The notes under the pieces were generated by a model. That model worked only from the letters and a program-made list of their open reading frames with translations, searched no databases and was not told the origin of the DNA. The position numbers and the translations under genes were made by a program. A stretch of DNA of 64,000 nucleotides, taken from contig CBFFRQ010000077.1 of NCBI GenBank assembly GCA_965644315.1, positions 1 to 64,000 of the forward strand, given 5' to 3'. Numbering within the stretch: position 1 is the first letter of the stretch; the number at the start of each line of letters is the position of its first letter. Shown here one piece after another: positions 40,141-61,922 of the stretch. This stretch comes from Caecitellus pseudoparvulus (taxonomy: Eukaryota > Protista > Bigyra: Bicosoecida).

Positions 40141-40379
40141 GGCTCACCGGCGCCCAGGGGGAGCCACGCAGTTGAGGCAAGTGCGGAAATCACTTTGCTG
40201 GCAAGGCGCACCCAGCGACAATTCGCGCTCGAAAAGGAAGCAAGCTGGTATAGCACAGCTATCACAACAATGTTTGATGCACGTGAAGTTGATCTACCTT
40301 GTTCTGAATTTGCAGCATTTGCTTTGCCCAACACTGCCATGACTGCTGTGACGGGTGCGCTGCGTCTTTGGGCGGTTCA

Positions 40380-42677: not shown

Positions 42678-42948
42678 GCTTGCCGGATCAATGAATTCAA
42701 TTTCCGCTGGTCACTCTGCAGTCACCCTTGCACACACAAGCCTCGAGCAACACACATGTCAAGAGGGGAGCACAAGTGAACTACATATCACCAAACGCAC
42801 GATGATTTGCTCGAAGACTGACTTTGAGGCTGAGAATCTCAACCGCTTGGCTAGTTCATGCAAACCGACAAAAACGGAACCAAGCACAATTACGCTCAAC
42901 GGCACACTATGGCAGGCTACTCTTGATTGCATGAGGATCAGGTGTCAA

Positions 42949-43896
42949 ATGGCTGCTCTCTCAATTGTCTTGCTCCTGGGGGCAGTGGCAAACCTATTGC
43001 ACCCCGTACCAGCTTGTGTCCTGTCACACCAAGATTCAGGCACCTGCACTCCGGTAAACGAGCTTCCCAGTCAAATTCCATTCTGCAGCAGCGTTGTCAA
43101 GTACACTGCATGCCTGCCGAGGACAGTGGTGCGCGAGCAGCCTCCGCCCCCTGCCAACGCGCATGAAACGCAGCGCCGGCCACGCCTGCTTCGTGCAGGA
43201 ACCGTGGACGAACCACACAGCAGCAGCCAAAGATCAGTGGGTTGCATCGAGTGTGAGAAGTGTCATTTCTACCCGTATCGCCATTGAAAACAACCTGACC
43301 TACTTGCAACGAGGTGCGTGCTTATCCGCGGGCACGTCAGACCAAAGCTCTCCAACAGTTGACACTTCCCGCAGGTGTGAACGAAAATGGCATTGTTGGC
43401 GACATTGCACAACGCTTTACTGATGGCCAAGACTGCCAGGACGCCTATCGGAACTTTGCATGCTTTCTGAACTTCCCGCGATGCGACGGGGAGCTCAAGA
43501 GCATGACCCTCTGCAGAAGTGTTTGTGAGAACTTCTTCATCGCGTGCAACGTAAGTGGGGAACACGATCATCACCATGCGATCCGTGTTCAAGCGTGAAT
43601 ACCACAGCTTCCTGTGCTGTGCGCAGTACCCCGAGGATTTGTGGCGGTGTGGCAACCCAGTATTCTTCGGGGCTGATGAGCCGGAGGAAGAGACGGACAT
43701 CGATGAGAACGGACTGCCCATCTTCTGGACGGCGCCCTTTCCAGGCCTCCCCTTCACAGCCAACCGCTTCGATGGAGACGGCAACCCGCTTGAAGCGTGC
43801 ACTCCCAGCATCGCCGGCAGCGCTGCGACGTCCCACACAGCAGCGCTCGCCGCTTTGCTCGCAGCTGCGGCAGCCCTGGCAAGCATGCTCGTGTAA
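42949..43896 (+). CDS. Secreted/GPI-type protein with a Frizzled-like cysteine-rich domain (3 introns)
   Basis: Signal peptide. Spliced CQDAYRNFACFLNFPRC..LCRSVCENFFIAC. Hydrophobic C-terminal tail after TPSIAGSA. Confidence 0.75.
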
Positions 43897-43935
43897 ACAT
43901 ACGGCCCAGTCCAGACCACACTGCTTCGGCAAAGA

Positions 43936-44835
43936 CTACTTGCTGAACATGCCACGCCACTGCTGGTGGCCGCCCAGGACCGCTGTGAAGAGGCCCATGC
44001 TGTTCAAAAGCGTTGGTGACAAACCCAGCCCCTGTGGTAGGGAGTAGTGAAGCGTCACAAGCCAGTCAACAAAGTACCGCAGAATGGACAGGCCTTCACT
44101 CGTCAGCTCTTCCTCACAGACTGCCAGGCGCTGCCGGAGAGTCGCGAGGGCTTCCTGTGGAGGCAGGCCGGGGTCTTCCCCTTCCTCCCGCGGAGACTTG
44201 GCAGAACCGTCAGCGGGCACTGCACTTGAGACGTCAGGCACTGTCGCCTGTCGGTGCACTTCAGCCTCGGCTGAAGCGATGCCAGCACGCAGTTTCGCAA
44301 CCTCGCCGAAAGTGGTGGCAGCTTGTTGCGCCTTCAACAGCAGCTGGCAAGCCAAAAAGAGACACGCACAGCGCGTCCCGAACGTCTGCAATCGGGACAC
44401 AGTGGGCGCTGGCATTACTCCAGGCACAGCTTTATTGAGCCAGGCCACGTGGTCTGTGGGATGGAACAGGATCATGGACACAGCCCCTGCATCGTGTAGA
44501 AGGGCCAGGACGGGATCCCTGCCCCGGTGCGGGTTCCGAGCCAGCGCAACCACCCAGTCTGCCAATCCAAAGAAGCGAAGCATGTGCCGTCCTTCGGTAA
44601 CTTTGTCCGCCACACGGCCCAAAGCCTGCTCGCCAGCAAACGCTGCCAGCTGCAAGCGCGGGTCCGCATCGCCAAAGCCATCCGAGGCCTGAAGCCGCTG
44701 CAGGCCCAAAGCAGCCAGCCGGGACGCATACACCATGACCTTAAACACTTTGTCTGATCCCCAAATATTGCTGGTGAAGGTGCTGAACTTCCCCAGCACC
44801 TCCACAGTGGCGTCCACAGCGTCACCTTCAGCCAT
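43936..44835 (-). CDS. PEX11: Peroxisomal biogenesis factor 11-like
   Basis: DKVFKVMVYASR, RHMLRFFG, DHVAWL and a C-terminal TM helix GLFTAVLG. Confidence 0.75.
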   Translation of the reverse strand: MAEGDAVDATVEVLGKFSTFTSNIWGSDKVFKVMVYASRLAALGLQRLQASDGFGDADPRLQLAAFAGEQALGRVADKVTEGRHMLRFFGLADWVVALARNPHRGRDPVLALLHDAGAVSMILFHPTDHVAWLNKAVPGVMPAPTVSRLQTFGTRCACLFLACQLLLKAQQAATTFGEVAKLRAGIASAEAEVHRQATVPDVSSAVPADGSAKSPREEGEDPGLPPQEALATLRQRLAVCEEELTSEGLSILRYFVDWLVTLHYSLPQGLGLSPTLLNSMGLFTAVLGGHQQWRGMFSK

Positions 44836-45227
44836 GGTGCCAACGGCACTGCAGCACGCCAACGGCAGGAAATGGGTCCGGCAAGAGACGAGGCAGCTTT
44901 CCAAGAGCTGACTGGTGCAGAAGGACGACAGTATTCATTTTCAATGGAGTCTTATGTGCAGCGGGACTTGTTTGGCCTTGGTGTCATTTTGCTCATGATG
45001 CGAATCTGCCCAAAGCGAAACGCAGGCGTTGAGCTGCGACTTGCGGTCAATGAGAAAAGGCCAGCACAATAAAATCCCGCGCAGCAGCAAGAAGTCACTG
45101 TGCAAGCTTCATTGTCACCTGCACACTGTCTTGCAGCAAGGGCTGTGGCCGCCTTGGACTGCAAGCGTGTCGGCGCTTGCGTTTCACTCCTCCACACCGC
45201 CCAGCGTCACAGCTCACTCTGCGAAGA

Positions 45228-46336
45228 ATGGAGGCACTGGCGTTCTGTGGGCTCGCTGGGCCATCTGGCTCCATGATGCAGGCCCAGGGAAGGTGGCGCT
45301 TGGGTGAGAAGGCCTCGCCGCAGTACGCAGCGCATCCTGGTGCGCACTCCCTTGCCCACTCCATCCTCGAGCAGTGACGGGGATTGCCCTCTTGAACTGG
45401 CTGCTGCTGGTGGTCTCTGTCGGACACACGGGCTGGATTGACGGGACGGGACCGCAGAATGCCAACCCTGGATCCCGTGGCCTCGACTTTCACTTCGGTC
45501 AGTGCACGCTGCGACAGAAGGTGCGGAAGTTGGCTTCGCGAGCATCCCTGCTCCCCTCCCGCAGGCCTCCAAACGTTCAGGTATTTTGAGAAGACGAACC
45601 TCATGGGAGTGGCAGTCATAACAACAACATCCTACGATGGTAGGTGCTTGCTCTGTGTTCAACCAGCGCACGGCCGAGCACTGCCCATGTATCCCCCACA
45701 GCTGACCAAGCTCTGGATGTGGCCAACCACAAAAATGCCGGCACGCACCAGGTGAAGCCTGGGCAGCTGTATGCCACACTGGGCCTCATGGTGACAGCTG
45801 TCGTCCTGCAGACGCTGGTGTTGTTGGCCCTCGCCCAACAACGCACAGGCTTCTTCGGGACGAACTTGGAAGTGACGTGGCGAGCTCGCGCTTGCTCCCT
45901 GTGCAACGTCATCTTCGTCATCGCCGCAGTGGGCGCCTTTGCCAATGCGGGATACCTCGATGCGCTCAAAGCTGCCTACGATGCCGACAAGGACGACGAG
46001 ACGCACTATGGCGACGGGTTCAATTCCGCTGCGACGTCCATCGCTGGCCTGCTCATCCAGCTGGCCCTTACTGTCGTCTTTGCAGGCAGCCTGGAACAAG
46101 TGGCCAAGTACTACGCAGCACTGGGGATCGACTCGGGGAACGGCATCGCTGCTGCGGCTGCTGGCTTGTCGGGCACGGATGAGGCCGCCAGCGGCGGCAC
46201 CGCCTCCTCCGCCTACACGACACTGACGCCTGAGGAACGCGCACGGATCCTTGGCAAGTCTGCCCCAGATGGGGATGCTGACTCCGAAGAGCAAGGAGGC
46301 GGCTACCAAGGCTCTTCTGCGTATGCCTCACTCTGA
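45228..46336 (+). CDS. Four-TM membrane protein, claudin/PMP22/amastin-like topology (3 introns)
   Basis: Spliced TM1 followed by W..(F)GL, then two TMs and YGDGF before TM4. Confidence 0.55.
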
Positions 46337-46542
46337 CGTGGGGAAGCAGAGCGCAATGCACCACCTCGACAAGTGCGACGGCTGGAACTACCATTCTTTT
46401 CGACAGTGCAGAGAGAGACGATCACGCTCAGCTACAAGGTACGCCGGCGCAAGGAAGCGCATCTGAGATCTGATTCCAACATCAGAACGGCTGATCTGCG
46501 GCAACATGCATTCGTCTTGTGGGCACGGGGCACTAGAGGTCC

Positions 46543-49500
46543 TTACTTGCCTAGCAGCCGGCCACACAGCCGAGCGAACCAAGCCTGAAACAGAAGAGCA
46601 GCTGGACCGAGAACCCCTGCATCCCTGCCTGTCCCCTTGATGCGGGAGTTCAAACTACTCAAGGAGAATGAGGCCTCTGACAAAGCCGCCACATCCCCAC
46701 CGCACACACCTGCAACATTGATCAACACGTCTGACAGCTCCTCCGCATCCCCGCTGACCCACGCGGCACGCAGCTGCTCTTCAAGAACATGGCGATCATC
46801 CTCGCTGTGCAGAGCCAAAGGCTTGAACTCCCTCAGCACATCCTCCAACACCGAGTCATCCGGCACACCTTGGTCTGCGGCTGGTGCCGCCACTGCAGGT
46901 GGTGGGGCGGCAGATGCCGCAATCGGGGACTCCCCGGTGAAGGCCGAACCCTGAGCCATGCCACTAGGCGCGGCCGTGCCATGCTGTGCAGGCTTGGCTC
47001 GACCCTTACTCCTAACCTGGCCCACCCACCCTTGGAAACGACCAACAGCTTTTCCAAAACCTCCCAACGCAGCACCTCGCTGTTGGTGGCGGTCTTTGAT
47101 GCTCTGCAAGCAACCTTGTGCACTCCGCAGTGCCGCCACATCCCCGCCACACACACCTGCAATGTCGATCAGCACGTCTGATAGCTCCCCCGCATCTCCA
47201 CTGGCCCATGCTGCACGCAGCCGCCTTTTACGAGCACGGCGATGTTGCTTGCTGTATCGAGCGAAAGGCTTGAAGTCCCTCAGCACATCCTCCAGCACCA
47301 CATGATCCCGAACAGCCTGGCCTGTGGCTGATGTTGCCACTGCAGGGGGAAGGGTGGTAGCTGCCTTCCGCCCAGACGGCTTTGTGCCCGGCGTAGCCTT
47401 GGTCTTGGCCTTTGCTGTGCCACTTGGCCCAGTCGTGCCACGTTGTGAAGGCTTGACATGCCCTTCGATCCCCACTCGATGCACCCACCCTTGAAACACC
47501 CGAAAAGCTTCAGCAAGAGCTCCCAACGCAACACCTCGCTGTTGGTGGCGGTCTTTGATGCTCTGCAAGCAACTCTGGGACTCCTGCAGTGCTGCAACAT
47601 CGCCACCGCACACACCTGCAATGTCGATCAGTACGCCAGATAGCTCCCCCGCATCCCCACTGGCCCAAGCGGCACGCAGCTGCTCTTCAAGGACACGTCG
47701 ATCTTCCTTGCTGTATCGAGCGAAAGGCTTGAAGTTCTTCAGCACCTCCTCCAGCACAGTATCGTCCTGCACAACCTGGCCTGTGACTGATGCCGCCACT
47801 GCAGGTGCTGTTGTGGCCGTTGACTTCTGGTCAGATGGCTTTGTGTCCTGCGAAGTGTTGGCCTTGGCCTTAGTCTTGGTTTTGGCCTTGGCCTTGGCCT
47901 TGGCCTTGGCTGGTGCTGCCGTGCCTTCGCCTTTGGGTAAAGTCACGCGTGACACGTCAGAAGTCTGGCTGTTGGGGGCTGACTTGTCAGAGCCTCTGCT
48001 GGTCCGGGATGGTCGCTTGTAAGTTGCTCTGTCTCGTTTGCTGTGAGCAAGCACAGCCACCGGCACCACACTTGGCGGTGCTGGCGAAGGTGCTGGAGGT
48101 TGAGCGGCTGGTTGTGGTTTCTTCAAGCTCGCAGTATGCATCCTCTCGAAGTCCATTCCCAGCTCCGATTCCAGCTCCTTCACAGCAAGTTTGGCTGCAT
48201 CCAAGGCCTCAAGAAACATGTCTGTCGGTGACGTATGGGAACTTCGCCGACGGATGAGCGCTGGCGGAGCGAAAGAGCAGGAGGACCGGGTACCTGCGGC
48301 CTGGAACCTTGCGCCAGATGCCCATTCAACTGGGACCAGCAACCCGTGCTTCGTCCAAAGGCTAAAGGCAGGAAAAGGAAGGGCGGCTGCGAGACGAAGG
48401 GTGGACGATTCAACCCCTCCCCCCATGGCAGTACCTGCGGCGGTTGAACTGCTGGCATCAAGTGCGGCAAACGCCGCATCCTGCAGAACACATGCCCCAA
48501 TGTTCGTTCCTGAGGACGGTTCACCACCGTCCATGCCGGAAGCGGTCTGCCGAGCGGCTGCCCCAGCGCGCCCCGCTGCACGAATGCACCGAATGATCAA
48601 TGACTGCAGCTCTGGGACGTGAGGAGAGGGCTGCAGCATGCACGACAAGGACTGGAGGAGCTTGAGGGCATTTATCGCGCGCAAGTTTGAAAGGGACCAG
48701 TTCAAATTAGTCCAGGAACGGTCTCCCTCCAGCTTTACGCTGCGAATGCGAAGACCAGAGCTTTCCTTGCCATCGGCATCAGCGGCACCGACGCGCCCCA
48801 TCCAAGAGCAGTCCACTGAGAACTGGCTGCAACGTGTCCCCAGCAAGCAGGCAGCCGCCACCATGCCATCATCAGGCCACAGAGCTGACACGTGGTCAAG
48901 TGAAAGGCTGTGCTCTGAAGCGCCTGCCTTGCAAAACGTGAACCACGCACGGTCTGGGCTGCTCGCACCCAGTGGCAGCAGCCGTGTTCTGCTGTGTGGA
49001 GAAGCCAGGCCAACATCGCCTGGCGGAACACACAAAACAGCACCCTCAGTGGACACTGCATGCGAAGTGCTTGCTGATGATCTGCCTTGGCGACGACCTC
49101 GCGCAGATGGACGGCCCCGCTTCAGCCCCGTAACGGCTGTACCGTCGTCACTATCAGCTTCAGCAGCTGCCCCGCCCCCCTCTTTCCCGATTGCGGATGG
49201 TCTCTGAAACAATGGTGTGTCTTCAGACCAGGTGGAGGCAAATTTTGAGAAAGCGTGCGCGTTTGTGTAAGGAGAGAAGGCTAGCTTTGAACACTGCAGC
49301 GAGGAGCTCAAGCACAGGTGCAAGTCTCGAAAGCTGTCAGCATCTTGCCAGTGGGCTGTAACCATGGTCGCCTCCCACCCCCCCCCCAAGGCATCACTGT
49401 CTTCATCTGCTGCCAAAGACAGAAAGCCGCGGAAGTACGTTCGTGTGTCCAGTCGCACCTGGTCTTCCACAGCGACAAGCTCTGGGTCAAAGGCGGGAGG

Positions 49501-52500
49501 CAGCACGCCAGCTCCGGCCTCACCAGAAACCGATGCCTGCTCTGCAGATTTTGCCTTCTTGACGCTTGGAGAAATGAGACAGCCCCAGTTTGGTGACTTG
49601 AAGTGCTTCTTGACAGTCCCAACCACATGGCACTTGGCTCGTCCCCGTGTGGCTCCGACTGGGCTGCTAAGTGCTGCCGCGCCGCCGCTGAAGAGCTGCT
49701 CGATTCTTTGGAGCACTTCGGCCCTCCCACCACTGTTGACAATGCGGAACGAAGAAGCTCTCATTTTTTGCAGCAAGGGAAGTCGCAAATTGCCCCCGAA
49801 ACGCGTTCGCAGCAAGCAAAGCATGGAAGGGTGGATGCCGCTGCGCAAGGGTGCAGCACTGGAAGCTCTGAGCACATCTACAAAACCTTCGTCATGTTGC
49901 ACTTCAGCATGCAGAGCTGATTGTGCGTCATACGCACCCGTAGCAGGGTCACGAAGGCACGATCTTGGCTTCCGTAGGTGAAAGTCAGCCCCAGCTGCGG
50001 TGCGAATGACTGACCTTGGCAGGCTTACACAGGTCCCGGCCGGTGTGCGGTATGCAACTGTTGTTCCTTGGTCATGAACACGCCGTCCAGCCGTGGGGAC
50101 TGCGTGGGGATCGGTGGGAAGCCCAGAATACTTGCAAGACGGCTTTCCTTGGGCCCACGGGTTGAACAGGAGCAATGCCGATGCTTTGCACGTCGTCGCC
50201 GTTGACTTCAGTGTGGCCAAGTCTGACTCTAGACCTTCCAGGTTCAAGTGGAGGCTTGATAGCTGATCGCGGAGATCTTCCTCGGCTTGTGGATCGGTGG
50301 TGATAGAGAGCTCCTCCTCAAGAGCCACTTGCTCCGCTACGAGCTGCTCCTTCATGCGGGCCAGCTTCGCCTTCGACCGCTGCTGTTCTGGCACCACAAG
50401 CAGCAAGCCGCACTGAATGGCTTCAGGAAGTGCGGCGACGAGGACTTCAGGCTGCGAGTGTGAGGTCATGTCCACAGTCACAGTCAACAAGAACTCGTCC
50501 AATCGTTGTGGGTCCGCTTGGAGCATGGCCCGCATGCTCTTCAGGCTCGCCAGATAGTCTTCAGCACTCACACCAGGTGGGGGCCACAGGCGATCCATGA
50601 CTTGGGCGCCCTCTTTCAGCCGTGACGCGTCACCGGTCACCAGATCGCACCATCGCTCTGGGAGCTGTGGTGCTCGTGCCTTGCGTCTTGCGCCCTTTGG
50701 GTAAACAAGCGCGGCACTCACCTCGCGAATCCGACGGTCGAGCTTTATGGCAATCCATGCAACGTTGCTGGACACGGCTTGTGAAGCTGCCTTGCGTTTT
50801 GGGAGCACGCATGCGAGGTTCTCGGAATGCGTCATAGCGATGAGGGAACGCAGGACATCCTCGTCTTGGCACAAGCACTCTTCGGGGACCTTTCTCTTAG
50901 AATCCCGAAGACAGCGGGCTGCAGCTTGCAACGCAGCATGCTGGTCGGCCACCCCTTCGTCATCCGGCAGGTGAAGCTGAAAGTAGCCACCGCCTCCTCG
51001 CCCTGACTGGACTCTTGCTTGCACCTCTGACAATTTCCGAAAATGGTCAAGGGCGCAGTTGTGAATGGCATGAAGAGCTTTTGCCTTGAGACTGTGCTTG
51101 ACGGCCCAAAAAATGCGTTTACCGGAAGGAGTGCTCCTCCAGTGCAAATACGCATTCCGGATGGCAAGAACATCTGACCCATTATCACTCCGAGTGGCAG
51201 ACATGCTTGCCGAGGCCGACGCCCGCATGCCAAGAACTTTTGCTACACTGCCAAAGGAGCTCTGTGGCTGCAAGAAGGGGCTGTCGTTCTCAATGATGGA
51301 GGCAAGGAGGCAGGCTTCAAAGGGGAGGTTCATGGCATATCCCAACCGCAGAAGCAAAGCCGTCTTTTCGTGTTGCGGGAAGCTTGCCATCCACATGCCT
51401 AGCTCTGTCAGCTTCGCATCCTCAGACGCAGACTGGAGTGCCCCAAGTCGCGCAAGGTGGCTCACCGCATCACGCAGCTGTTGCATGCTTGGTGGATCAA
51501 GAGCTTGCTTGAGCAGTTCGCTAACCCTCCCATCGAGCCCTGTTGTCTTGATTCGCAAGATGGTGTTGCGCAGAGGGAGGCGAAGCATTTCCGGGCTGTC
51601 GTGGGGCGGCATGCCAGAAGTGAAGAGAGCCTTGGGGTACAAGCGAAAGGCAACGCCTGGCATCTCGCGCCCCGCTCGACCGCTGCGTTGGGCTGCGGAG
51701 GCTTGCGAAACCCAAACTTGCACGAGCCCCGGCTGCCCATGCTTTGAATCAACTTGCATCTGCTTGGCCACCCCCAAATCAATGACGTGGGAGACCTTAG
51801 GGAGAGTCACAGATGACTCGACAACATTCGTTCCGATGACAACACGCGCCTTGGTGACCATGCCACCAGTTCGGTCAAAAGCCCGGAGCTGCTGGTCGAA
51901 CTCGATTGACGAGTGCATCGGCTGAACGACCAGGGTCTCTCTCTTGCGAACATCCACCAACCTTGGGTCGTCAAACAAATCTGTCAAGGAGTTCAGCGTG
52001 GCCATCCCATCAACAAAGATCAACACGGTGTGCCTGGGCCGTGCAACTGCGACTGCGAGCTCTACAGCCAGCCTCAGCTGAGTTTTCAACCCCTGACCCA
52101 AAAACCTCGGCATGGGAGCGGACCATGCCCTCTTGCCAGGCCTTTGAGCAAAGCACTTTGCGAATTTTTCAACAAGGGGTTGGACTCTTTGCCTCTGCCC
52201 AGGTGTCAGCAGAGGTAGACCCGCACCCCCGCTCTTCCACGTGCGCATCAGCTCATCCAGGAACACAGGGGTCACCTCATAGCGTTTGGCTCCGACGAAA
52301 ATGGCCTCAGGTGTGGGTTCACTTGGGATGCAGTCAAAGTACTCACTGAACAGCCCGGCCTGCAAGGTGGCAGACATGAGCACGAGGCGAGTTCGGCGCC
52401 GGTTTTGAGGAGCTCCATCTGCAGACAGTGAAGAAGGATGCTTGCCACCAGGCGCAACCCCAAAGTCATCATCATCTGCATCAAGGTAGGGTGTGTGTGG

Positions 52501-55500
52501 AGTGGATGGGCAGTGATCTTTGGTCAGCAGCTTCTTCAGCAGTAGACAAAGCAAGTCTGAGTCAGAGCTGCGCTCATGCACCTCGTCCAGGATGATGTGG
52601 GAGTACGAGGACAGCTTCTCCTTATTGTGGCTAAGCCACGTGAGCATCCAGGCAGTGGTCACGAAAGTAAGTTGGGTACCTTGCGACACGCATATTTCAC
52701 GTCCAATTCTGTACCCAACAGTCTTGCCGACAGCCTCCCCACGTTCTGATGCCACTCGCTTTGCGAGAGATGTCGCAGCGATACGAGTTGGCTGGCACAC
52801 TAACACCCTCGGCTTTCGCGCTGCCTGTGAATCATCTAGAACAAACTGTGGAACCTGTGTGCTCTTTCCACACCCAGTCTCTCCCTGGATGACTGTGATT
52901 GTCCGGTTGCGGATGTTGTCAATGATGCCTTCGCGGTGATCCAAGATGGGCAGCCGAGCAGAGCCATCACCCTCCTCTGGCAATGGGGTGCTTGCCTCCT
53001 CAATTTCTTCTTGAGTGGCCACTGGCAACTGTACTTCAAAGGGATTGAAGTACTCCAGACGCTGCTCCACCTCCACCGCCCCCGCCGGAAACGCACCCCC
53101 CTCTGCACGAGACGGCTCACCTCCCTCACCCCAATACCTCAACACATCCCCCAACACACCCTCACGCAGCGCGTCAAAGTACGCACGACCCGCCTCAGGC
53201 AGTGCCTCACGACCCGCCACCACCGCGGGATGCAGCCCACACCCCTCGCGCTGGCACGCCTCACGCTCCACCGCATCCAACAACCCGTACAACGTGCGGC
53301 CATCGTACACACCACCCAACCACACCATCGGCAACGCCCCGCCACCCCCCGCACCACCCGCCACCGCATCACCACCTGCTGCACCCACGCCTGCTCCTGC
53401 TACTGCCGCACCGCCCTCAACACCCGACATCGGCCACCGCACAGACTCGGGTGCCGGGCTCGCGCTGCCCCCCAGACCGCACATCACGCCGGCGTTCATG
53501 AACTCGTCCACCACGTTCTGGTAGCACTTCACCATCTCCACGTGCTCGTACCGAGGCACCTCAGCACGGTCCAACGCCAGACCGCTCGGACACCCAAACT
53601 CCAACGACACCAGCATCAACAACAGCACGTCCACCTGCACTGGCGTCAACAACACAGGCGCCGACATCGCCACGCCACTGCTGGCTCCCAATGTAACGTG
53701 TGCCTCTGTCTTGCGTGCCCACATGAGCTGCAGGCCCATGAGGTACCGCAGGGCCAGTGCGCCGACGATGGGTGTGGCAGACCGTGCATGGTCGGGGGGG
53801 GTGTCTTGCATGGCCTCCATGAACATGCGGTCAAGCAGCGGCAATTCGTCATCGTCTGGGGCCAGAAGCGTCTCAACCTTCCCTACCTGCATAGCTTTCT
53901 CAAGAATCGCATGGTGCTCTGCGTTTCTGACCTTAGAAACGCTGACGGGGCCGACAGGCCAGCTCCATGTTTCGCCTGCCGCTGAGTTGGCGGCAGAACT
54001 GGTTGTCACGCTCACGAGACGCAGCCAAGTCTTGAGGCGCTCCTCGCGAGACCCGTTGAAGTGTGCAAAGTTTGGAATGCTTGTTTCCTGCAGAGACGCT
54101 TGGATGGCAGCAGCGTCTTGGGGATCAACGCATCTGCACAGCTCGGGCTCTGGCGTCTCAAGATCGCCAACGACATTCACACCCCGGAACACAAAGTATG
54201 CCCGTGTGACACTATCGCCGGATTCAGTAGCGGCGGTGGCTGACCCCTCATCGTGTGGAGTTGGCTCGCTGACTCCTTCTCCTGCTGTGGGCACCGGAGG
54301 GGCAGCAGCCCCAGCCTCATGGGCCCACGTGTCAAATGGAGTGTGGCCATTCAGCATGATACACCCCGTGCAGAACGCCCTGCGACCCAGCGATCCGGTT
54401 GACGAGGCAATCAGGGGTGCTGTGACGAGCGAGGCCAACGGCAAGCTAGCTTCCCATGCAGCTGCTCGCCGAATGGCCTGCTTCCTCTCTGTACTATCGT
54501 CCAGATCTTGCAAATCATCTAGAGTGAACTCCAGATCCGAGAGGGATGGCGATGGAAAGTCTCTTGCAACCCATGACAACCCATCGGAGGAACCAGCCCA
54601 CGCTTTGCCTGAGGCGACCACTCGCGCCGTCTCATTAAGGTGAAGCTTGTACAGCCAGATGAGGGCTTGCCCAGACGTGTATGGCTTTTGAACGCCAGCA
54701 CACGTCGAGAGATCGACCAGGTTCTGAGCCAGTGCAAGGGCCACTTGCTCACAGCTCTCCCCATCCCCGGCAAGATCCTGGACACTGCATGCCTCAAGCA
54801 CTCTCTGAGACCTTTCCATCAATTCGCAAGTTTCAAAGCGGTCCACGGCAAGGGTGTGCGACACGCTGTCGATGAAGCGTTGCTCAACCTCCCCAACTGC
54901 GCCGGGAAACAGTAAGTCGCGGGTACTTTCCCAAGCTCCCCTTGGGTCACGATCACAGCCTGCAGTGGCGTCGATTTCCACTTTGTGAAGCAGAGCCTTC
55001 AGTGCCTTGGCAGCAGCGGGAACGTTGGGTAGGTCCTGGGACAGAGGTGGGAGCCCCAGACGTGTTCGAAGGTCGGCGTCTTCGACGAGCTGCTTCGTGT
55101 AGTCGTTCCCTGCAAATGCGCCGACCAGTCCAAGGAAGTCTTCATGCAGACTTAGCTCGCTGCCCAAGTCAGCAGCGGTCAGAGCTGGAAGCACAAGCTC
55201 ATCATCAGTCGGCCACCGGTGCGCCATGCCCGCGACCGCGCCCGGCTGGGCAGCCTCGCCGGGAACTTGAAGCTCATCTACAGCTGCCGCCACAAGAGTG
55301 CCAATCACCTCACTCAGCTGCAGTGGATGCCATGTGCATCCAGCCACCGTAGCGAAGTCAGTGTCACTACTGACTACCCCCTCACACACCCCTCGCACAA
55401 CCAGTGCGGAGAGAAGGTCATCGGCTTCGCCTGCGGCTTGAACGACATGCACTTGGGCCTGACAGCCCTCAAGTGGTGTGTGGCTGACTTTCTCCAAGAC

Positions 55501-55944
55501 TGCGATGCTGACTTCAAGGATGGGGCCGCCGATAACTTTGCAGCCTTGATACTCGACGTCCCTGTCAGCAGCAGTTCCTGCGCAGAAGTCCCTCAAAACC
55601 GCTTGCTTTTCCATGCGCTGCATGCTCCGGCGTGCATCCTCATCTGCTTTGAAGGCTGCCACCTTGATTGAGTCATGGGTCTTCCCATCCAGGACGAACA
55701 CCAGCTGCTCGGCATTCCCAAAACCGCGCGCGATAACTAGCTCCAGTACTTGCTCAAACGAACGCAGCTCTCCACCCCACGCTCCAGGAATGTCGCCATC
55801 GAAAACCTGTCTCATGTACAGTTCATTCACATGAAAAATCAACGAATACGCGTCGACGGCAAGCCGCCGGCCTGGGATTGGCTGCTGAGGCACTCGGCCA
55901 TCCAGCCGCTGATTGATGTACGACAGTAGATGCTTGACACCCAT
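46543..55944 (-). CDS. 3133-aa fusion: Asteroid/FAM120-type XPG-PIN nuclease + Spindle-E/TDRD9-like DExH helicase + 3 C-terminal repeats
   Basis: Nuclease motifs MGVKHL, AVDA, VLDG, GEAD, SSDTD and GNDY. Helicase motifs GETGCGKSTQ, GYRIG, DEVHER, MSAT, TNVVESSVT, QRSGRAGR and PEMLRLPL. One uninterrupted 9.4-kb ORF. Confidence 0.88.
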   Translation of the reverse strand: MGVKHLLSYINQRLDGRVPQQPIPGRRLAVDAYSLIFHVNELYMRQVFDGDIPGAWGGELRSFEQVLELVIARGFGNAEQLVFVLDGKTHDSIKVAAFKADEDARRSMQRMEKQAVLRDFCAGTAADRDVEYQGCKVIGGPILEVSIAVLEKVSHTPLEGCQAQVHVVQAAGEADDLLSALVVRGVCEGVVSSDTDFATVAGCTWHPLQLSEVIGTLVAAAVDELQVPGEAAQPGAVAGMAHRWPTDDELVLPALTAADLGSELSLHEDFLGLVGAFAGNDYTKQLVEDADLRTRLGLPPLSQDLPNVPAAAKALKALLHKVEIDATAGCDRDPRGAWESTRDLLFPGAVGEVEQRFIDSVSHTLAVDRFETCELMERSQRVLEACSVQDLAGDGESCEQVALALAQNLVDLSTCAGVQKPYTSGQALIWLYKLHLNETARVVASGKAWAGSSDGLSWVARDFPSPSLSDLEFTLDDLQDLDDSTERKQAIRRAAAWEASLPLASLVTAPLIASSTGSLGRRAFCTGCIMLNGHTPFDTWAHEAGAAAPPVPTAGEGVSEPTPHDEGSATAATESGDSVTRAYFVFRGVNVVGDLETPEPELCRCVDPQDAAAIQASLQETSIPNFAHFNGSREERLKTWLRLVSVTTSSAANSAAGETWSWPVGPVSVSKVRNAEHHAILEKAMQVGKVETLLAPDDDELPLLDRMFMEAMQDTPPDHARSATPIVGALALRYLMGLQLMWARKTEAHVTLGASSGVAMSAPVLLTPVQVDVLLLMLVSLEFGCPSGLALDRAEVPRYEHVEMVKCYQNVVDEFMNAGVMCGLGGSASPAPESVRWPMSGVEGGAAVAGAGVGAAGGDAVAGGAGGGGALPMVWLGGVYDGRTLYGLLDAVEREACQREGCGLHPAVVAGREALPEAGRAYFDALREGVLGDVLRYWGEGGEPSRAEGGAFPAGAVEVEQRLEYFNPFEVQLPVATQEEIEEASTPLPEEGDGSARLPILDHREGIIDNIRNRTITVIQGETGCGKSTQVPQFVLDDSQAARKPRVLVCQPTRIAATSLAKRVASERGEAVGKTVGYRIGREICVSQGTQLTFVTTAWMLTWLSHNKEKLSSYSHIILDEVHERSSDSDLLCLLLKKLLTKDHCPSTPHTPYLDADDDDFGVAPGGKHPSSLSADGAPQNRRRTRLVLMSATLQAGLFSEYFDCIPSEPTPEAIFVGAKRYEVTPVFLDELMRTWKSGGAGLPLLTPGQRQRVQPLVEKFAKCFAQRPGKRAWSAPMPRFLGQGLKTQLRLAVELAVAVARPRHTVLIFVDGMATLNSLTDLFDDPRLVDVRKRETLVVQPMHSSIEFDQQLRAFDRTGGMVTKARVVIGTNVVESSVTLPKVSHVIDLGVAKQMQVDSKHGQPGLVQVWVSQASAAQRSGRAGREMPGVAFRLYPKALFTSGMPPHDSPEMLRLPLRNTILRIKTTGLDGRVSELLKQALDPPSMQQLRDAVSHLARLGALQSASEDAKLTELGMWMASFPQHEKTALLLRLGYAMNLPFEACLLASIIENDSPFLQPQSSFGSVAKVLGMRASASASMSATRSDNGSDVLAIRNAYLHWRSTPSGKRIFWAVKHSLKAKALHAIHNCALDHFRKLSEVQARVQSGRGGGGYFQLHLPDDEGVADQHAALQAAARCLRDSKRKVPEECLCQDEDVLRSLIAMTHSENLACVLPKRKAASQAVSSNVAWIAIKLDRRIREVSAALVYPKGARRKARAPQLPERWCDLVTGDASRLKEGAQVMDRLWPPPGVSAEDYLASLKSMRAMLQADPQRLDEFLLTVTVDMTSHSQPEVLVAALPEAIQCGLLLVVPEQQRSKAKLARMKEQLVAEQVALEEELSITTDPQAEEDLRDQLSSLHLNLEGLESDLATLKSTATTCKASALLLFNPWAQGKPSCKYSGLPTDPHAVPTAGRRVHDQGTTVAYRTPAGTCVSLPRSVIRTAAGADFHLRKPRSCLRDPATGAYDAQSALHAEVQHDEGFVDVLRASSAAPLRSGIHPSMLCLLRTRFGGNLRLPLLQKMRASSFRIVNSGGRAEVLQRIEQLFSGGAAALSSPVGATRGRAKCHVVGTVKKHFKSPNWGCLISPSVKKAKSAEQASVSGEAGAGVLPPAFDPELVAVEDQVRLDTRTYFRGFLSLAADEDSDALGGGWEATMVTAHWQDADSFRDLHLCLSSSLQCSKLAFSPYTNAHAFSKFASTWSEDTPLFQRPSAIGKEGGGAAAEADSDDGTAVTGLKRGRPSARGRRQGRSSASTSHAVSTEGAVLCVPPGDVGLASPHSRTRLLPLGASSPDRAWFTFCKAGASEHSLSLDHVSALWPDDGMVAAACLLGTRCSQFSVDCSWMGRVGAADADGKESSGLRIRSVKLEGDRSWTNLNWSLSNLRAINALKLLQSLSCMLQPSPHVPELQSLIIRCIRAAGRAGAAARQTASGMDGGEPSSGTNIGACVLQDAAFAALDASSSTAAGTAMGGGVESSTLRLAAALPFPAFSLWTKHGLLVPVEWASGARFQAAGTRSSCSFAPPALIRRRSSHTSPTDMFLEALDAAKLAVKELESELGMDFERMHTASLKKPQPAAQPPAPSPAPPSVVPVAVLAHSKRDRATYKRPSRTSRGSDKSAPNSQTSDVSRVTLPKGEGTAAPAKAKAKAKAKTKTKAKANTSQDTKPSDQKSTATTAPAVAASVTGQVVQDDTVLEEVLKNFKPFARYSKEDRRVLEEQLRAAWASGDAGELSGVLIDIAGVCGGDVAALQESQSCLQSIKDRHQQRGVALGALAEAFRVFQGWVHRVGIEGHVKPSQRGTTGPSGTAKAKTKATPGTKPSGRKAATTLPPAVATSATGQAVRDHVVLEDVLRDFKPFARYSKQHRRARKRRLRAAWASGDAGELSDVLIDIAGVCGGDVAALRSAQGCLQSIKDRHQQRGAALGGFGKAVGRFQGWVGQVRSKGRAKPAQHGTAAPSGMAQGSAFTGESPIAASAAPPPAVAAPAADQGVPDDSVLEDVLREFKPLALHSEDDRHVLEEQLRAAWVSGDAEELSDVLINVAGVCGGDVAALSEASFSLSSLNSRIKGTGRDAGVLGPAALLFQAWFARLCGRLLGK
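46560..47800 (-). repeat. Three tandem ~450-bp (~150-aa) coding repeats at the C-terminus of the nuclease-helicase
   Basis: VLE(E/D)VLxxFKPxAxxS..LRAAWxSGDAxELSxVLIxxAGVCGGDVAAL..FQxW occurs three times, with spacings of 459 and 447 bp. Confidence 0.92.
53071..53837. repeat. Copy 1 of a ~765-bp near-identical direct repeat (copy 2 at 56539-57302)
   Basis: Alignment by eye shows scattered, mostly third-position substitutions and one codon indel. Confidence 0.95.
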
Positions 55945-56508
55945 GGCCACAAGAGCGTACAGAGATCTATCAAGGAGACGAACAAGAGACGTAACAATGT
56001 GAAGTCTGATGATGAAGTTTGGTGATTGGAAAGTGGTCACCCGGTTCTGCTGAACGCTTCTGGCACGCACTCGCGCAAGCGGTCAACACAGTACGCACCA
56101 CCACGCCAACGCCACCTCGATCAAGACCCTCGGTAAGATTCTGAAGCAGTCTTGTCCTACTAATCAATCACACTAAACTGAAATAAAAGCAATCGTCACA
56201 CCCGGGGGCTGTGACCAGTCACACGAAGCGCTGAAAGTGTCTGAAGCGAATGGCTGGTGTGCTATCAATTTCCGCAAGACTCAAAGACACACCTGTGGCC
56301 TGCACCAGCCACTGATGGCACACGCGAAATGAATTGAACGTGCAAACCACGTGCACACATATGGGGCCTCAAGCGTTCATACAATGAATTGCAAGTGTAC
56401 CCAACTTGAGCCGAGAAGTACAGTTCTACCACATATGCGTGGCAGCCAGCACATACACCAATGCAAGGGGACAGGACTCTCACAGACAAGGGAAACACGG
56501 AACAAGAG

Positions 56509-59343
56509 CTAGGTCCAGTACGCAAGCCCAGCCTCATACTCCACCACCCCCGCCGGGAACGCGCCACCCTCCGCGCGAGCAGGCTCACCTCCCTCACCCC
56601 AATACCTCAACACATCCCCCAGCACACCCTCACGCAGCGCGTCAAAGTACGCACGACCCGCCTCAGGCAGCGCCTCACGACCCGCCACCACCGCAGGATG
56701 CAGCCCACACCCCTCACGCTGGCACGCCTCACGCTCCACCGCATCCAACAGCCCGTACAACGTGCGGCCATCGTACACACCACCCAACCACACCATCGGC
56801 AACGCCCCGCCACCCCCCGCACCACCCGCCACCGCATCACCACCTGCCTCCACACCTGCTCCCGCTACTGCCGCACCGCCCTCAACACCCGACATCGGCC
56901 ACCGCACAGACTCGGGTGCCGGGCTCGCACTGCCCCCCAGACCGCACATCACGCCAGCGTTCATGAACTCGTCCACCACGTTCTGGTAGCACTTCACCAT
57001 CTCCACGTGCTCGTACCGAGGCACCTCAGCACGGTCCAACGCCAGCCCGCTCGGACACCCAAACTCCAACGACACCAACATCAACAACAGCACGTCCACC
57101 TGCACTGGCGTCAACAACACAGGCGCCGACATCGCCACGCCACTGCTGGCTCCCACTGTGACGTGCGCCTCTGTCTTGCGTGCCCACATGAGCTGCAGGC
57201 CCATGAGGTACCGCAGGGCCAGTGCGCCGACGATGGGCGTGGCGGACCGTGCATGGTCTGGAGGGGTGTCTTGCATGGCCTCCATGAACATGCGGTCAAG
57301 CACTGGCTCACCAGGACCGCCACACAGTGGAACTGCCCCGAGTTGGGCCGAACGTTTAGGGATCATTGATCCGAGGTAAGCTTTTGAAGGCTCCTTAGTT
57401 GTGACAGAGACAGGCTCGACGGGCCAGCTCCAAGCTTCACCTACTGGTTGGTGGGCCGCGGGAGAAGTCGTCACGCCCACAATGCGCAGCCAGTACAGGC
57501 AGCGCTGTTCCAGTGTGTCGAGCACCATACTTCGTGCAGGGAAGTCTGTGCTCTTCAGGCTTTCCGCGATTTCAACAGGTTTCTGGGGATTCACCCTGTC
57601 CATCAGGTGAACACCAGCTGCGTCTTGCGACTCAGGGAGCACGCTGAGACCAGGCACGACATAAAAAGTTCGTGCACTCTTGACTCTTTCCCGTGCACTT
57701 GAGTGCTGTCCGAAGGCATGATGGCTTCGACGAGCTCCTCGCCTCCTGTGCCTGTCGAAATGAGATGCCCCGTGTGGAGCTCCTTCCTGCAGCCACCCGC
57801 AGTCATCAGCAGAAAGGCGTCTGAAGAGCAAGTATCCAGAAACACCAAGAGTTCCAGCCATGGTAGCTTGAATAGGCAAGCTTGACAAGGTCGCGAGTGG
57901 GAGGCCCAGTTCCCAGGAGAGTGCTTTGCGGATCTTCGCCGCTCGTGGTGTGCTGTCACCCAAGCGCTCCACTTCTGCAGTAGTGGCATGAAGGGAAGCA
58001 AGGACACTGTCAGCCGGATCTACAAGTGTCGGAGGTGAGAACCCATCCCATACGGATACCCACAGCATCTTGTCCTCTAAAATGTTCTCAATGAAGCTCA
58101 GGTGCGAAGCAGTGGCCCACAGCTGGAGCTTGCCGAAGTTGTAGCCCCTGCTGATGCCCAGCGTGTTCGAGGCGCGAGCGAAGGCATGCCCCAACGTATC
58201 TGCTTGACCCTGCATCTCTTGTTCATCAGTTCCAAGCAGCGCCACTAAGTCGCTGCTTTCCACGGCTCGAATCAAGGCTGAGACTGCTGAATGGACCCGG
58301 AACGAGTGAGAGTCAAGCGTCCTTTGGACTCTGCGACGGAACTCTGGCAACCCTAAGCAGGAGTGCTCGCGTTCAAGGAGCGTGTGCAGCTGCTCCCACG
58401 TCGCTTGCAGTCCGCCTGGCGGGGCATCAAGTACCTCCAAGCCAAGCTGTCGGAGTAGGCTAGAGAGCACCTTGACATGTCCCGGCAGGCAGGGCACTTC
58501 TTCCGATGGGTAAAACCCTAGGGTCTTCCGTGCAGAACGGTCGTACAGCATGGATCTCGTGAAGTTGTTGCCCACGAAAGCTGAGACGAGGGGCATGTAC
58601 TCCGAGTGCACTCCAAGCCCGAGTGCCACCTCGTCGCTGGTGACCAAGGGTAGAAACGCAGGCCCGCCACCATCATCATCGCGAAGGAACTCTCCAAAGC
58701 TGACCGGATGCCACTGACTGTGTGGATATGCGGCAAGATCTGAGTTGTGGCTCACAGCACCGTCACAAACGCCGGAATGTACGAGAGCTGCGATGTGCGC
58801 GCTGGTGGAGTCGTTGGCGAACGTGACGTGGATGATGGCATCTGTGTGAACAGGGCGATCACGGGCCATGGCTATCAATGCTTGGTGCCCCACGTCCCCC
58901 AGCAGGCACTGGCTATCCTCAAGGAAAGAGTTCCGGTCTTGGGGGTCGAGCGGCAGTCTCTCAGAGGCGGGTTGGGGAGACTCCAAGTACTGCACGAATT
59001 TGTCTGCTTCCCGCACCCTGCCGACAAAACGGTGCAGAGAAGCTTGGTCTGCGACGTCAAATACAGTTGCTTGGAAGAAGTTGCTGCAGTGTAGCACAAA
59101 CACCAAGGTGTGTGCTTCGCCGAACCTTTGCACGACTACTTGCGTCAAGAACTCTGCGAAGCCGCACAGGTCCCCGCCTTGCACCACCCCAGCCGCCTCC
59201 CCTTCTGAGCGCCGGTAGAACTCATTCCTAGCGGCTGAGATGAGTGCTTCGCCATCGATGGCAAGGCGTCGGCCAGCGACAGGTACGGACTGCGACGGGT
59301 AGCCAGCAGCCGCGAGAGCACTGGTCAGCCCACGGATACCCAT
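56509..59343 (-). CDS. 944-aa Asteroid/PIN-like paralogue of the N-terminal part of the downstream gene, with a degenerate active site
   Basis: MGIRGL, AIDG, VLHC, SHNSD and GNNF align co-linearly with the motifs of the 3133-aa protein. Intact, intronless ORF. Confidence 0.85.
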   Translation of the reverse strand: MGIRGLTSALAAAGYPSQSVPVAGRRLAIDGEALISAARNEFYRRSEGEAAGVVQGGDLCGFAEFLTQVVVQRFGEAHTLVFVLHCSNFFQATVFDVADQASLHRFVGRVREADKFVQYLESPQPASERLPLDPQDRNSFLEDSQCLLGDVGHQALIAMARDRPVHTDAIIHVTFANDSTSAHIAALVHSGVCDGAVSHNSDLAAYPHSQWHPVSFGEFLRDDDGGGPAFLPLVTSDEVALGLGVHSEYMPLVSAFVGNNFTRSMLYDRSARKTLGFYPSEEVPCLPGHVKVLSSLLRQLGLEVLDAPPGGLQATWEQLHTLLEREHSCLGLPEFRRRVQRTLDSHSFRVHSAVSALIRAVESSDLVALLGTDEQEMQGQADTLGHAFARASNTLGISRGYNFGKLQLWATASHLSFIENILEDKMLWVSVWDGFSPPTLVDPADSVLASLHATTAEVERLGDSTPRAAKIRKALSWELGLPLATLSSLPIQATMAGTLGVSGYLLFRRLSADDCGWLQEGAPHGASHFDRHRRRGARRSHHAFGQHSSARERVKSARTFYVVPGLSVLPESQDAAGVHLMDRVNPQKPVEIAESLKSTDFPARSMVLDTLEQRCLYWLRIVGVTTSPAAHQPVGEAWSWPVEPVSVTTKEPSKAYLGSMIPKRSAQLGAVPLCGGPGEPVLDRMFMEAMQDTPPDHARSATPIVGALALRYLMGLQLMWARKTEAHVTVGASSGVAMSAPVLLTPVQVDVLLLMLVSLEFGCPSGLALDRAEVPRYEHVEMVKCYQNVVDEFMNAGVMCGLGGSASPAPESVRWPMSGVEGGAAVAGAGVEAGGDAVAGGAGGGGALPMVWLGGVYDGRTLYGLLDAVEREACQREGCGLHPAVVAGREALPEAGRAYFDALREGVLGDVLRYWGEGGEPARAEGGAFPAGVVEYEAGLAYWT
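56539..57302. repeat. Copy 2 of the ~765-bp direct repeat (copy 1 at 53071-53837)
   Basis: Same alignment as copy 1. Confidence 0.95.
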
Positions 59344-59685: not shown

Positions 59686-60486
59686 TCACGCTTGGTCTGG
59701 AGAGGGTGCGTACGCTGATGAGGAGGCTTGGGCTGGGCCATCACCAGCCACAAGCGGGCGCTGCTCAGCGGCGTCTGTGGCGGCGGACAGCGTCTCCATG
59801 CCCTCTCCCCAAGCCGCCCAGAGCCAGAGGGCCCCCTGGATCGCCAGCAGCGCCGTGGCGGCAGCAACACAGTCAAAGGCCGAGCCGTACCCACAGAAAG
59901 ACTTCTGCCCTGGCGCAAGTGCGCCTGGGCCGGTCCAGAACGAGCACATCACAGGCTTCAGGTCGCTGGCGGCGACGGTGCCGACGGCAGCGATGCACAG
60001 GATGACCCCTAGGAAGGGCAGGACACCCGCAGTCCAGAATAGGAGCTTGCGTGAGAAGCTGCTGAGCGACACGTTCAGGGCTGTGACGAGCAGCAGGGTC
60101 GTTGCAGCGGCCATCACGGCTACGGTCACCATCACGCCGGCCACGCGGCCAGGGAGCTCTGCGTCAACAGTGGTGCCGCCAGTCACTTTCTGGATGCCGT
60201 TCACGACGCTGAGCTGCTTGTCCACGGTGAAGTAGCAGTACTGGAACTGGTGGTCGCCCGTCATCTCTCGCTGCTGCTGCTTGGTCCAAAACAGGCCGAG
60301 TTGGTTCAGCTCCACCAGGCCCTCTGGCATGGAGTCATCGCCTGGCGCCCGATACAGCCCGGATGAAATCCAATCGAAGCCGATGACCCCGTTCAGCACC
60401 ACAGCCAGGTTGATGAGGGACAGGTACAGCACTGCGCAGGGCCAGAGCGAAAGCTGCCAGTCTTGCAGAGCGCAACAGGCCACCAT
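59686..60486 (-). CDS. Four-TM membrane protein, claudin-like topology
   Basis: TM1, FDWI..LGLFW..C, two TMs, then GYGSAF before TM4. Confidence 0.6.
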   Translation of the reverse strand: MVACCALQDWQLSLWPCAVLYLSLINLAVVLNGVIGFDWISSGLYRAPGDDSMPEGLVELNQLGLFWTKQQQREMTGDHQFQYCYFTVDKQLSVVNGIQKVTGGTTVDAELPGRVAGVMVTVAVMAAATTLLLVTALNVSLSSFSRKLLFWTAGVLPFLGVILCIAAVGTVAASDLKPVMCSFWTGPGALAPGQKSFCGYGSAFDCVAAATALLAIQGALWLWAAWGEGMETLSAATDAAEQRPLVAGDGPAQASSSAYAPSPDQA

Positions 60487-61180
60487 GTCGGCACGCACCT
60501 GTGCGAGTTCGACCAAGAATGCTCTTCTGAGATCCAGTGGCAGCATTTAGCCCGAAGTGGTCCGAGAATCGCCTCAGGCAGCCCTCCATGGCCTCGTTCC
60601 TTGCACGGGCGTGTTGGCTCCCAACGGCACTGCACTTGACACCCGCCGCGCTGAAGCGCAGGAAGCGAGCAGACACTGAGGAATGGAGAGAGGCAAGAAT
60701 CGGATTCATATGAAGGATGGGTTTTGGATGTCTGTGGATTTTTTCGGAGCGTTGCTGCTGCTCTGGTCTCCTGGTTCCCCTGTCTGGTTCAGCAGGAGAT
60801 GAAGCCAAATCTCGTCCGCAGCTTCGCGGCACAATGCACGATGCATTCAGTGCGCTATAAAAGTATGTTGAGACATGGTCGACGAAGAAGCGCTGAAGGT
60901 CCTCGTTGGCGACAGTGAACAATATCCAACTCTGACCAGCACGCAAGAACCAAAAAGGGACTCGGCAACCTTCACGGTGAAAGACAAGGGTCCAAAGTTG
61001 CCCCCTTGACAACAAAGTAATTAACCAAGTGTAGCAAAACAACTTACACCAAAAGCCCGCTCATGTCTATCTTCGATTGGCAGTTTCTTGTCCTCTATAC
61101 AGCTGCCGCCAGTGCTTCTTTCGTCCTGGTGTGGCTCGGTAATCCGCAGCAGGAAGCGATTTCCGCACCGCTTGCCAGGC

Positions 61181-61915
61181 ATGTTGAAGCCGTTCAAGTT
61201 CACGCACGTGCTGTACGAGGACGGTGACGCTCTCGGGTTCATCTTTGCAATTGTGTCCCTGCTGCCTGTGTGCGTGCTCGCGCCTGCTCGCCGGGTGTTG
61301 GCAGCAACCACAGACCTTTTCCCGACTCACAGCATTGTGCTCGTTGGTCTGTTCACGCTGTTCGTGTCACGACGGGACTTCCGGACGCTGGCCCTCACAG
61401 TGGGCCTGCTTGTGAATGAGATCTTAAACAATGTTCTCAAGCGCCTCATTGCCCAGCCCCGCCCTGACCTGCTCGTGAACCAGGTGCACGTAGCGGACGG
61501 CGTGGCTGTGAGCGGCATCGCACCCGGCCACGGCATGCCCTCTGCTCACGCCCAGTTCATGGCTTTCCTGGCCTCTGCTGTGACGGGTTGGATTTGGCAC
61601 CGCTGGTTCGTGTGCAGCCGCCTGCGGTGGGCAGGCACTGCGGCAGTGCACCTGGCGCTGGCCGCAACGATCCTGTCACGGGTGTACTTGGGGTACCACA
61701 CGCCTGCCCAAGTGGCTGTTGGCTCTGTGCTGGGGTATGCGATGGGCTGCTTGCATGTGCTGCTGTGTGAGTTGGTGTTGGTGCCGTCTGTATTTCCGCG
61801 CCTGGCCCGAACTGCTCTGGCCAGAACGCTGCAGTTGCGCGACACGTCCAGGGTGCAGAACGTGTTGCGCGTGGAGTATTACGCGGCGACATCCTCCAGC
61901 GCCGGCGGGCGGTGA
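61181..61915 (+). CDS. DOLPP1: Dolichyl-diphosphatase (PAP2 family); probable in-frame intron 61270-61332
   Basis: THVLY..GD, KRLIAQPRP, GMPSAHAQF and SRVYLGYHT. Confidence 0.92.
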   Translation: MLKPFKFTHVLYEDGDALGFIFAIVSLLPVCVLAPARRVLAATTDLFPTHSIVLVGLFTLFVSRRDFRTLALTVGLLVNEILNNVLKRLIAQPRPDLLVNQVHVADGVAVSGIAPGHGMPSAHAQFMAFLASAVTGWIWHRWFVCSRLRWAGTAAVHLALAATILSRVYLGYHTPAQVAVGSVLGYAMGCLHVLLCELVLVPSVFPRLARTALARTLQLRDTSRVQNVLRVEYYAATSSSAGGR

Positions 61916-61922
61916 GCGCCCC

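What the first reader, a model, noticed from the sequence alone, without database searches (positions are those of the whole stretch)
46543..59343. Candidate undescribed two-gene system: active PIN-nuclease/DExH-helicase fusion beside a catalytically dead, helicase-less paralogue
Seen: two tandem, co-oriented, intronless genes with co-linear N-terminal regions. Gene A (55944-46543) keeps every acidic XPG/FEN1-type metal ligand (AVDA, VLDG, GEAD, SSDTD, GNDY). In gene B (59343-56509) the equivalent positions read AIDG, VLHC, DSTS, SHNSD and GNNF, so most ligands are lost. Gene B stops about 9 codons after the shared domain, just before the point where A continues into the helicase, and its 944-codon frame is intact. 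Established: FEN1/XPG-fold catalysis needs these carboxylates. Inference: B is a maintained pseudo-nuclease acting as an inhibitor, decoy or sensor partner of A, like paired immune receptors, possibly in anti-viral or anti-transposon defence.
Basis: partly seen in the sequence, partly recalled or inferred. Interest (0 to 1): 0.9.

Follow-up and report, generated by a model that had tools for sequence, protein, structure and literature searches.

The report
Dead nuclease copy beside nuclease-helicase fusion
A protist gene that joins a nucleic-acid-cutting enzyme to an RNA-unwinding enzyme (a widespread but apparently unstudied family related to an animal RNA-silencing helicase) has left two shortened copies in this genome, one of them a preserved but catalytically dead version next door, and the three keep swapping one protein domain, which hints at a role in genome defence but is not a conserved two-gene system.

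Summary
Observation confirmed: A (3133 aa) keeps all 7 FEN1-type acidic ligands; B (944 aa) keeps 2 of 7, has the same predicted fold and is under selection. The framing changes. A is not unique: Asteroid-type nuclease + DExH helicase fusions occur in oomycetes, dinoflagellates, an annelid and many metagenomes, as a clade sister to Spindle-E (100/99). I found no paper on it. There are three paralogues, not two: C (contig C78) also lacks the helicase and ends like B, but has an intact site. The last 255 codons of the shared module are 96% identical in A and B against ~30% elsewhere, and an independent allele of C carries the A/B version: ongoing gene conversion. A's two haplotypes differ 4-7 times more than neighbouring genes. 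No B-like neighbour at six orthologous loci. Best reading: a lineage-specific, Mkt1-like pseudo-nuclease acting as non-cutting RNA/partner-binding cofactor in A's probably RNA-silencing pathway; direct inhibitor or decoy role untested. No expression data obtained. The scan had noted A and C separately.

The parts
46543..55944 (-). Gene A: Asteroid-type XPG/FEN-fold nuclease module (aa 1-~960) + Spindle-E-related DExH (DEAH/RHA) helicase + long unassigned C-terminus, 3133 aa
54955..55944 (-). A nuclease core (aa 1-~330) with Gly2, Arg106 and all seven acidic ligands
53071..53837 (-). A copy of the 767-bp converted tract (aa ~703-957), helical C-terminal part of the Asteroid-like module
51085..52926 (-). 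A helicase core and HA2 region (aa ~1007-1620), motifs I, II, III, VI intact
48025..51084 (-). A C-terminal region without family match; strongly divergent between haplotypes
46685..47871 (-). Three internal repeats near A's C-terminus (77-81% DNA identity)
55945..56508 (.). 564-bp intergenic spacer between B stop and A start
56509..59343 (-). Gene B: helicase-less Asteroid-type paralogue, 944 aa, 2 of 7 acidic ligands left (D30, D202), Gly2 and Arg105 kept
56539..57302 (-). B copy of the converted tract, 96% identical to A's; 24 synonymous vs 5 non-synonymous differences

Best explanation
A is this genome's single member of a conserved protist family in which an Asteroid-type 5'-structure-specific nuclease is fused to a Spindle-E-related DExH helicase; most likely the helicase unwinds or remodels structured or small-RNA-targeted RNA and the nuclease cuts or trims the exposed 5' end (function inferred, family membership shown). 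Two lineage-specific partial duplications of the nuclease module produced B (older) and C (younger). B lost five metal ligands but kept the fold, the N-terminal Gly and the helical-arch Arg, so it probably still binds nucleic-acid ends and partners without cutting, as Mkt1 does: a non-catalytic cofactor or competitor in the same pathway. Repeated gene conversion keeps the C-terminal helical domain of A, B and C alike, which would keep any partner-binding surface shared. It is a local paralogue trio, not a conserved two-gene system.
For: Family and architecture: (closest relative L055 also has the helicase behind the nuclease). Helicase tree: fusion clade 99/98, sister to Spindle-E 100/99. Nuclease tree: (P0002,(B,(A,C))), ABC 98/93. 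Dead site. Fold kept. Selection on B: P(no stop) 0.001 after only 0.1 neutral substitutions/site while pS to A is saturated at 0.76; B-branch 14 synonymous: 0 non-synonymous in the tract. Conversion. The genome has one Piwi/Argonaute, one RdRP and one RNase III gene. Precedent: S. pombe Mkt1 keeps two of six ligands, works without them and is needed for RNAi silencing (PMC7026591); Mkt1, ASTE1 and FAM120 form one structural class and Mkt1-C binds Pbp1 (PMC12345631).
Against: RNA versus DNA substrate is not shown: human ASTE1 acts in DNA repair (PMC12345631) and A's fold hits are DNA nucleases. Spindle-E is represented by only two insect sequences in the tree, and A has no Tudor domain hit. The Argonaute match is weak and divergent. 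The 14:0 ratio may partly reflect variants imported from A or C by conversion rather than selection on B. The converted tract may be homogenised for mechanical reasons.
Confidence: 0.5

Rival explanations
1. One reading: B is a dedicated inhibitor, decoy or sensor that binds A (or baits a viral inhibitor of A), like a paired immune receptor; the converted tract is the co-evolving interface.
For: Tandem position; dead site with intact fold; tract held near-identical; A haplotypes hyperdivergent, dS 0.31 and dN 0.12 vs dS 0.04-0.07 in flanking genes, as seen at immune loci; Spindle-E can be antiviral (PMC5850395).
Against: No B-like neighbour at six orthologous loci; tandem position follows from duplication; conversion also involves C on another contig; no interaction evidence; complex prediction not available.
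Confidence: 0.2
2. B has diverged to a job unrelated to A (for example an mRNA-binding scaffold), and the shared tract is a by-product of ectopic, GC-biased conversion between similar sequences.
For: Codons 1-680 of B are only ~30% identical to A, branch length 1.96; GC3 rises from 0.60 to 0.71-0.75 in the tract; Mkt1-type proteins act as general mRNA scaffolds (PMC3985637).
Against: Conversion stops sharply at the domain border and tract differences are nearly all synonymous (dN/dS 0.07), so the swapped domain works in all three contexts.
Confidence: 0.2
3. The family acts on DNA or R-loops (ASTE1-like repair nuclease coupled to an RHA helicase), and B is a dead DNA-binding paralogue.
For: Best structural matches are FEN1/EXO1; ASTE1 is a DNA-repair nuclease.
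Against: The helicase groups with Spindle-E rather than DHX9/29/36/57; Mkt1 and FAM120A relatives act on RNA.
Confidence: 0.07
4. B is a decaying pseudogene or an assembly chimera.
For: No independent copy of B's N-terminal part found; 96%-identical tract could be mis-joined.
Against: A and B tracts differ at 29 coding sites; an independent metagenome allele of C carries B-type variants; 680 divergent codons without stop or frameshift.
Confidence: 0.03

Closest known systems
Asteroid/ASTE1 and FAM120 proteins (Pfam XPG_I_2, Asteroid_N, FAM120A)
   Same: XPG/FEN-fold N-terminus plus long helical C-terminal half; nearest clusters by features (0.97) and by structure over residues 1-~800; seven acidic ligands in A and C.
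   Different: A is fused to a DExH helicase; module is ~960 aa with large insertions; sequence below Pfam cut-offs; B lacks the ligands.
Spindle-E/TDRD9 helicases (piRNA pathway)
   Same: A's helicase clade is sister to insect Spindle-E; best PDB sequence hit is Spindle-E (narrowly).
   Different: N-terminal nuclease module; no Tudor hit; host has a single divergent Argonaute/Piwi, no evidence of ping-pong.
Mkt1 (fungi, trypanosomes, apicomplexans)
   Same: Dead FEN-like PIN protein keeping two acidic residues, non-catalytic role in RNA silencing and mRNA control (PMC7026591, PMC3985637).
   Different: B has no Pfam MKT1 match and nests inside the A clade: a convergent, recent loss of catalysis.
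Unnamed oomycete/dinoflagellate XPG_I + DEAD + Helicase_C proteins (e.g. Phytophthora infestans P0020, Lagenidium P0033, Symbiodinium P0032)
   Same: Same domain order, same seven ligands, one helicase clade: A's orthologues.
   Different: 1750-1950 aa against 3133 aa; no helicase-less neighbour seen.
Paired NLR / integrated-decoy immune receptors
   Same: Adjacent active and inactive paralogues, divergent haplotypes (from general knowledge).
   Different: Tandem rather than head-to-head, three copies, pair not conserved, no interaction shown.

Membership tests
FEN-like PIN nucleases (Matelska 2017, group 1) | PIN core with helical arch and H2TH/H3TH; FEN1/EXO1-like fold | tested here: met
   AlphaFold + Foldseek for A and B
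FEN-like PIN nucleases (Matelska 2017, group 1) | 6-7 acidic active-site residues (gene A, gene C) | tested here: met
   7/7
FEN-like PIN nucleases (Matelska 2017, group 1) | 6-7 acidic active-site residues (gene B) | tested here: not met
   2/7
Asteroid/FAM120/Mkt1 class | PIN-like domain followed by long helical C-terminal half | tested here: met
   Atlas features; structure match over residues 1-~800 to Asteroid/FAM120 clusters, TM by target about 0.5, (C-terminal model is low confidence)
Asteroid (Pfam XPG_I_2) | score over Pfam cut-off | tested here: not met
   no hit on A, B or C; oomycete orthologue 18 bits vs cut-off 24.2
Mkt1 | MKT1_N/MKT1_C domains and descent from Mkt1 | tested here: not met
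   no Pfam hit; nests with A and C (no Mkt1 sequence was in the tree)
DEAH/RHA helicases | motifs I, II (DExH), III (SAT), VI, HA2 domain | tested here: met
Spindle-E/TDRD9 | helicase core groups with Spindle-E | tested here: met
   sister clade 100/99, only two insect sequences sampled
Spindle-E/TDRD9 | C-terminal Tudor domain | tested here: not met
   no Tudor hit in A; PF00567 is present in the insect hits
Paired sensor/helper immune genes | pair conserved in relatives | tested here: not met
   no second paralogue beside orthologues in L056, L058, L059, L075, L076, L077; no close relative with long flanks was available
Paired sensor/helper immune genes | physical interaction and functional dependence | not testable with these tools
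   no complex prediction or bench data

The most novel reading that the evidence does not exclude
The Asteroid-Spindle-E fusion is an unrecognised core nuclease-helicase of RNA silencing or antiviral defence across SAR protists, and in this lineage it is tuned by a dead paralogue (B) and a free active nuclease (C) whose shared docking domain is kept matched by gene conversion while A's C-terminus diversifies against viruses.
Probability: 0.15. Interest if true: 0.85.

Novelty: new variant of a known kind. Interest (0 to 1): 0.5.

Why it matters
The main value is the family, not the pair. A single-chain Asteroid nuclease + Spindle-E-like helicase is conserved with an intact active site in oomycetes and dinoflagellates and seems unstudied; it links two poorly understood classes (Asteroid/FAM120/Mkt1 and Spindle-E) and can be tested in tractable oomycete lab strains. 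It may bear on where the animal piRNA helicase came from. B shows an independent repeat of the Mkt1 route from active nuclease to pseudo-nuclease, with its active sibling still present for comparison, and the locus shows domain-limited gene conversion plus a divergence island, both typical of genes in conflict.

Tried and rejected
Homologue search with A 1-958 found only C. Homologue search with the family alignment for standalone copies returned nothing, not even C or P0002 which are in the database, so it is uninformative. Metagenome scans for B or the family found nothing; exact look-ups of A and B failed. PDB sequence search of the PIN part gave only chance GST hits. A's C-terminal 1000 aa: no Atlas hit, no clear match to family C-termini. 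PADLOC: only weak P-loop hits. Four literature searches for this fusion found no description. Assembly collapse as the source of the 96% tract was rejected (29 coding differences; same variants in an independent sample). The 'compact Asteroid-like' gene noted by another reader was not recovered by my profile. The organism was not identified.

Full report
Observation. The window is from a GC-rich (about 60%), intron-poor eukaryote, 30.6 Mb in 215 contigs; the organism was not identified. Gene A (55944-46543, 3133 aa) and gene B (59343-56509, 944 aa) are open, co-oriented and 564 bp apart. Both start with the Met-Gly typical of the family. A has DEAD, Helicase_C and HA2_N hits at aa 1007-1523 and a weak XPG_I hit; B has no Pfam hit. 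AlphaFold2 models built on a 32-row alignment give a confident N-terminal 340 residues for both, and Foldseek places both with FEN1/EXO1/XPG. The Atlas puts the module with Asteroid and FAM120 proteins, by features and by shape. The seven acidic ligands are intact in A and in 26 of 31 other rows; B keeps only D30 and D202, plus Gly2 and the near-invariant arch Arg105.

A is not unique. A search with A's helicase region returned a block of 1750-3000 aa proteins annotated XPG_I + DEAD + Helicase_C from Phytophthora, Pythium, Bremia, Peronospora, Lagenidium, and unannotated equivalents from Symbiodinium, Effrenium, the annelid Owenia and many metagenomes; 34 of them carry an N-terminal PIN region by a local profile. 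In helicase trees they form one clade with A (99/98), sister to two insect Spindle-E proteins (100/99), apart from DHX29, DHX57, YTHDC2 and DHX34. The closest relative of the nuclease module (P0002, locus L055) is also followed by a helicase 53% identical to A's, across a frame change. A is the only member of this helicase clade among the genome's DEAH genes. I found no paper describing the fusion, though the library lacks most subscription journals.

Three paralogues, not two. A third copy, C, lies at G000:C78:418281-421169 (962 aa). It is 70% identical to A 1-966, keeps all seven ligands, has no helicase and stops at the same place as B with a similar last ten residues. A 96%-identical allele of C was assembled independently from a metagenome (L046). 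A tree of the unconverted part gives (P0002,(B,(A,C))) with A+B+C at 98/93. Since the outgroups are fusions, B and C are truncated duplicates that arose in this lineage, B first. No second paralogue lies beside the orthologue in six other loci with useful flanks (L056, L058, L059, L075, L076, L077), but all are distant relatives.

Gene conversion. A and B share about 30% of residues over codons 1-700, with synonymous sites saturated (pS 0.76), and then 96% DNA identity over 767 bp. In the tract dS is 0.13 (A-B) and 0.23-0.26 (to C), against 0.83 for A-C outside it; GC3 rises from 0.60 to 0.71-0.75. The metagenome allele of C differs from B at one site in the first 300 bases of the tract but from the genome's C at 37. 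The tract is therefore still exchanged among the three loci, and is not an assembly collapse. It covers the helical C-terminal part of the Asteroid module; the C-terminal domain of the related Mkt1 binds its partner Pbp1 (PMC12345631), so a docking role is a reasonable inference, not a result.

B is maintained. In simulation, 680 codons of B survive 0.1 neutral substitutions per site without a stop in 0.1% of runs, far less change than separates B from A. B keeps A's residue at 16 of 27 family-conserved non-catalytic columns and at 17 of 107 variable ones (p=1.4e-5). B-specific changes in the tract are 14 synonymous to 0 non-synonymous, though some may be imported by conversion. Expression could not be checked.

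A is a divergence island. Contig C110 (11.4 kb) is collinear with window 39716-51090 and is probably the other haplotype. Neighbouring genes differ at dS 0.04-0.07; A's C-terminal half differs at dS 0.31, dN 0.12. Old, divergent haplotypes confined to one gene fit balancing selection, as at defence genes; recombination with an unassembled paralogue is the alternative.

Mechanism. Shown: domain content, ligand loss, family, paralogy, conversion, selection. Inferred: A couples a Spindle-E-like ATP-driven RNA remodeller to a 5'-structure-specific nuclease. Spindle-E serves piRNA amplification (PMC11094040) and can be antiviral (PMC5850395); the genome encodes one Argonaute/Piwi, one RdRP and one RNase III protein. 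B most likely binds the same kind of ends or partners without cutting. The precedent is Mkt1, which in S. pombe keeps two of six ligands, does not need them, and is required for RNAi silencing (PMC7026591); whether its two residues are the same positions as B's was not tested. B is not an Mkt1 by descent.

Verdict. A real and tidy case, but made of known parts: pseudo-nucleases of this fold and paralogue conversion are known, and the pair is lineage-specific. What is new is the apparently undescribed Asteroid-Spindle-E fusion family and the active-fusion/active-free/dead trio linked by domain-limited conversion. New variant of a known kind; interest 0.5. 

Noticed in passing
G000:C78:418281-421169 (+) (L010, L046): Third paralogue C: helicase-less, active site intact; two alleles differ mainly in the converted tract.
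   Followed up: yes
G000:C110:1-11451 vs window 39716-51090: Probable haplotig; divergence concentrated in gene A (75-89% identity vs 96-98% in flanks).
   Followed up: yes
window 46685-47871: Three ~110-aa helical repeats at A's C-terminus, order of variants differs between haplotypes; no family match.
   Followed up: partly
L055:3100-3500: Closest relative has a frame change (small intron or error) between nuclease module and helicase; the gene caller split it in two.
   Followed up: partly
window 4994-8614 (-): S1-domain DEAH helicase (Prp22/DHX8-like), ordinary.
   Followed up: partly
window 31808-35935 (+): Membrane hybrid histidine kinase (HATPase_c + response regulator).
   Followed up: partly
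window 61923-63998 (-): VLRF1/Vms1-type release factor domain protein.
   Followed up: partly
window 11-1516 and G000:C78:422460-423490: Ankyrin-repeat gene with a 64%-identical relative just downstream of gene C, near the end of C78; C78 and C77 may be neighbours.
   Followed up: no
G000:C41:~127800-130000 (L071) and G000:C73:~59900-63500 (L073): The single Argonaute/Piwi and single RdRP found are both very divergent (Piwi 34 bits).
   Followed up: no
P0103, P0104, P0112: Oomycete/metagenome proteins fusing a DExH helicase to an RdRP domain, another helicase fusion with an RNA-silencing flavour.
   Followed up: no
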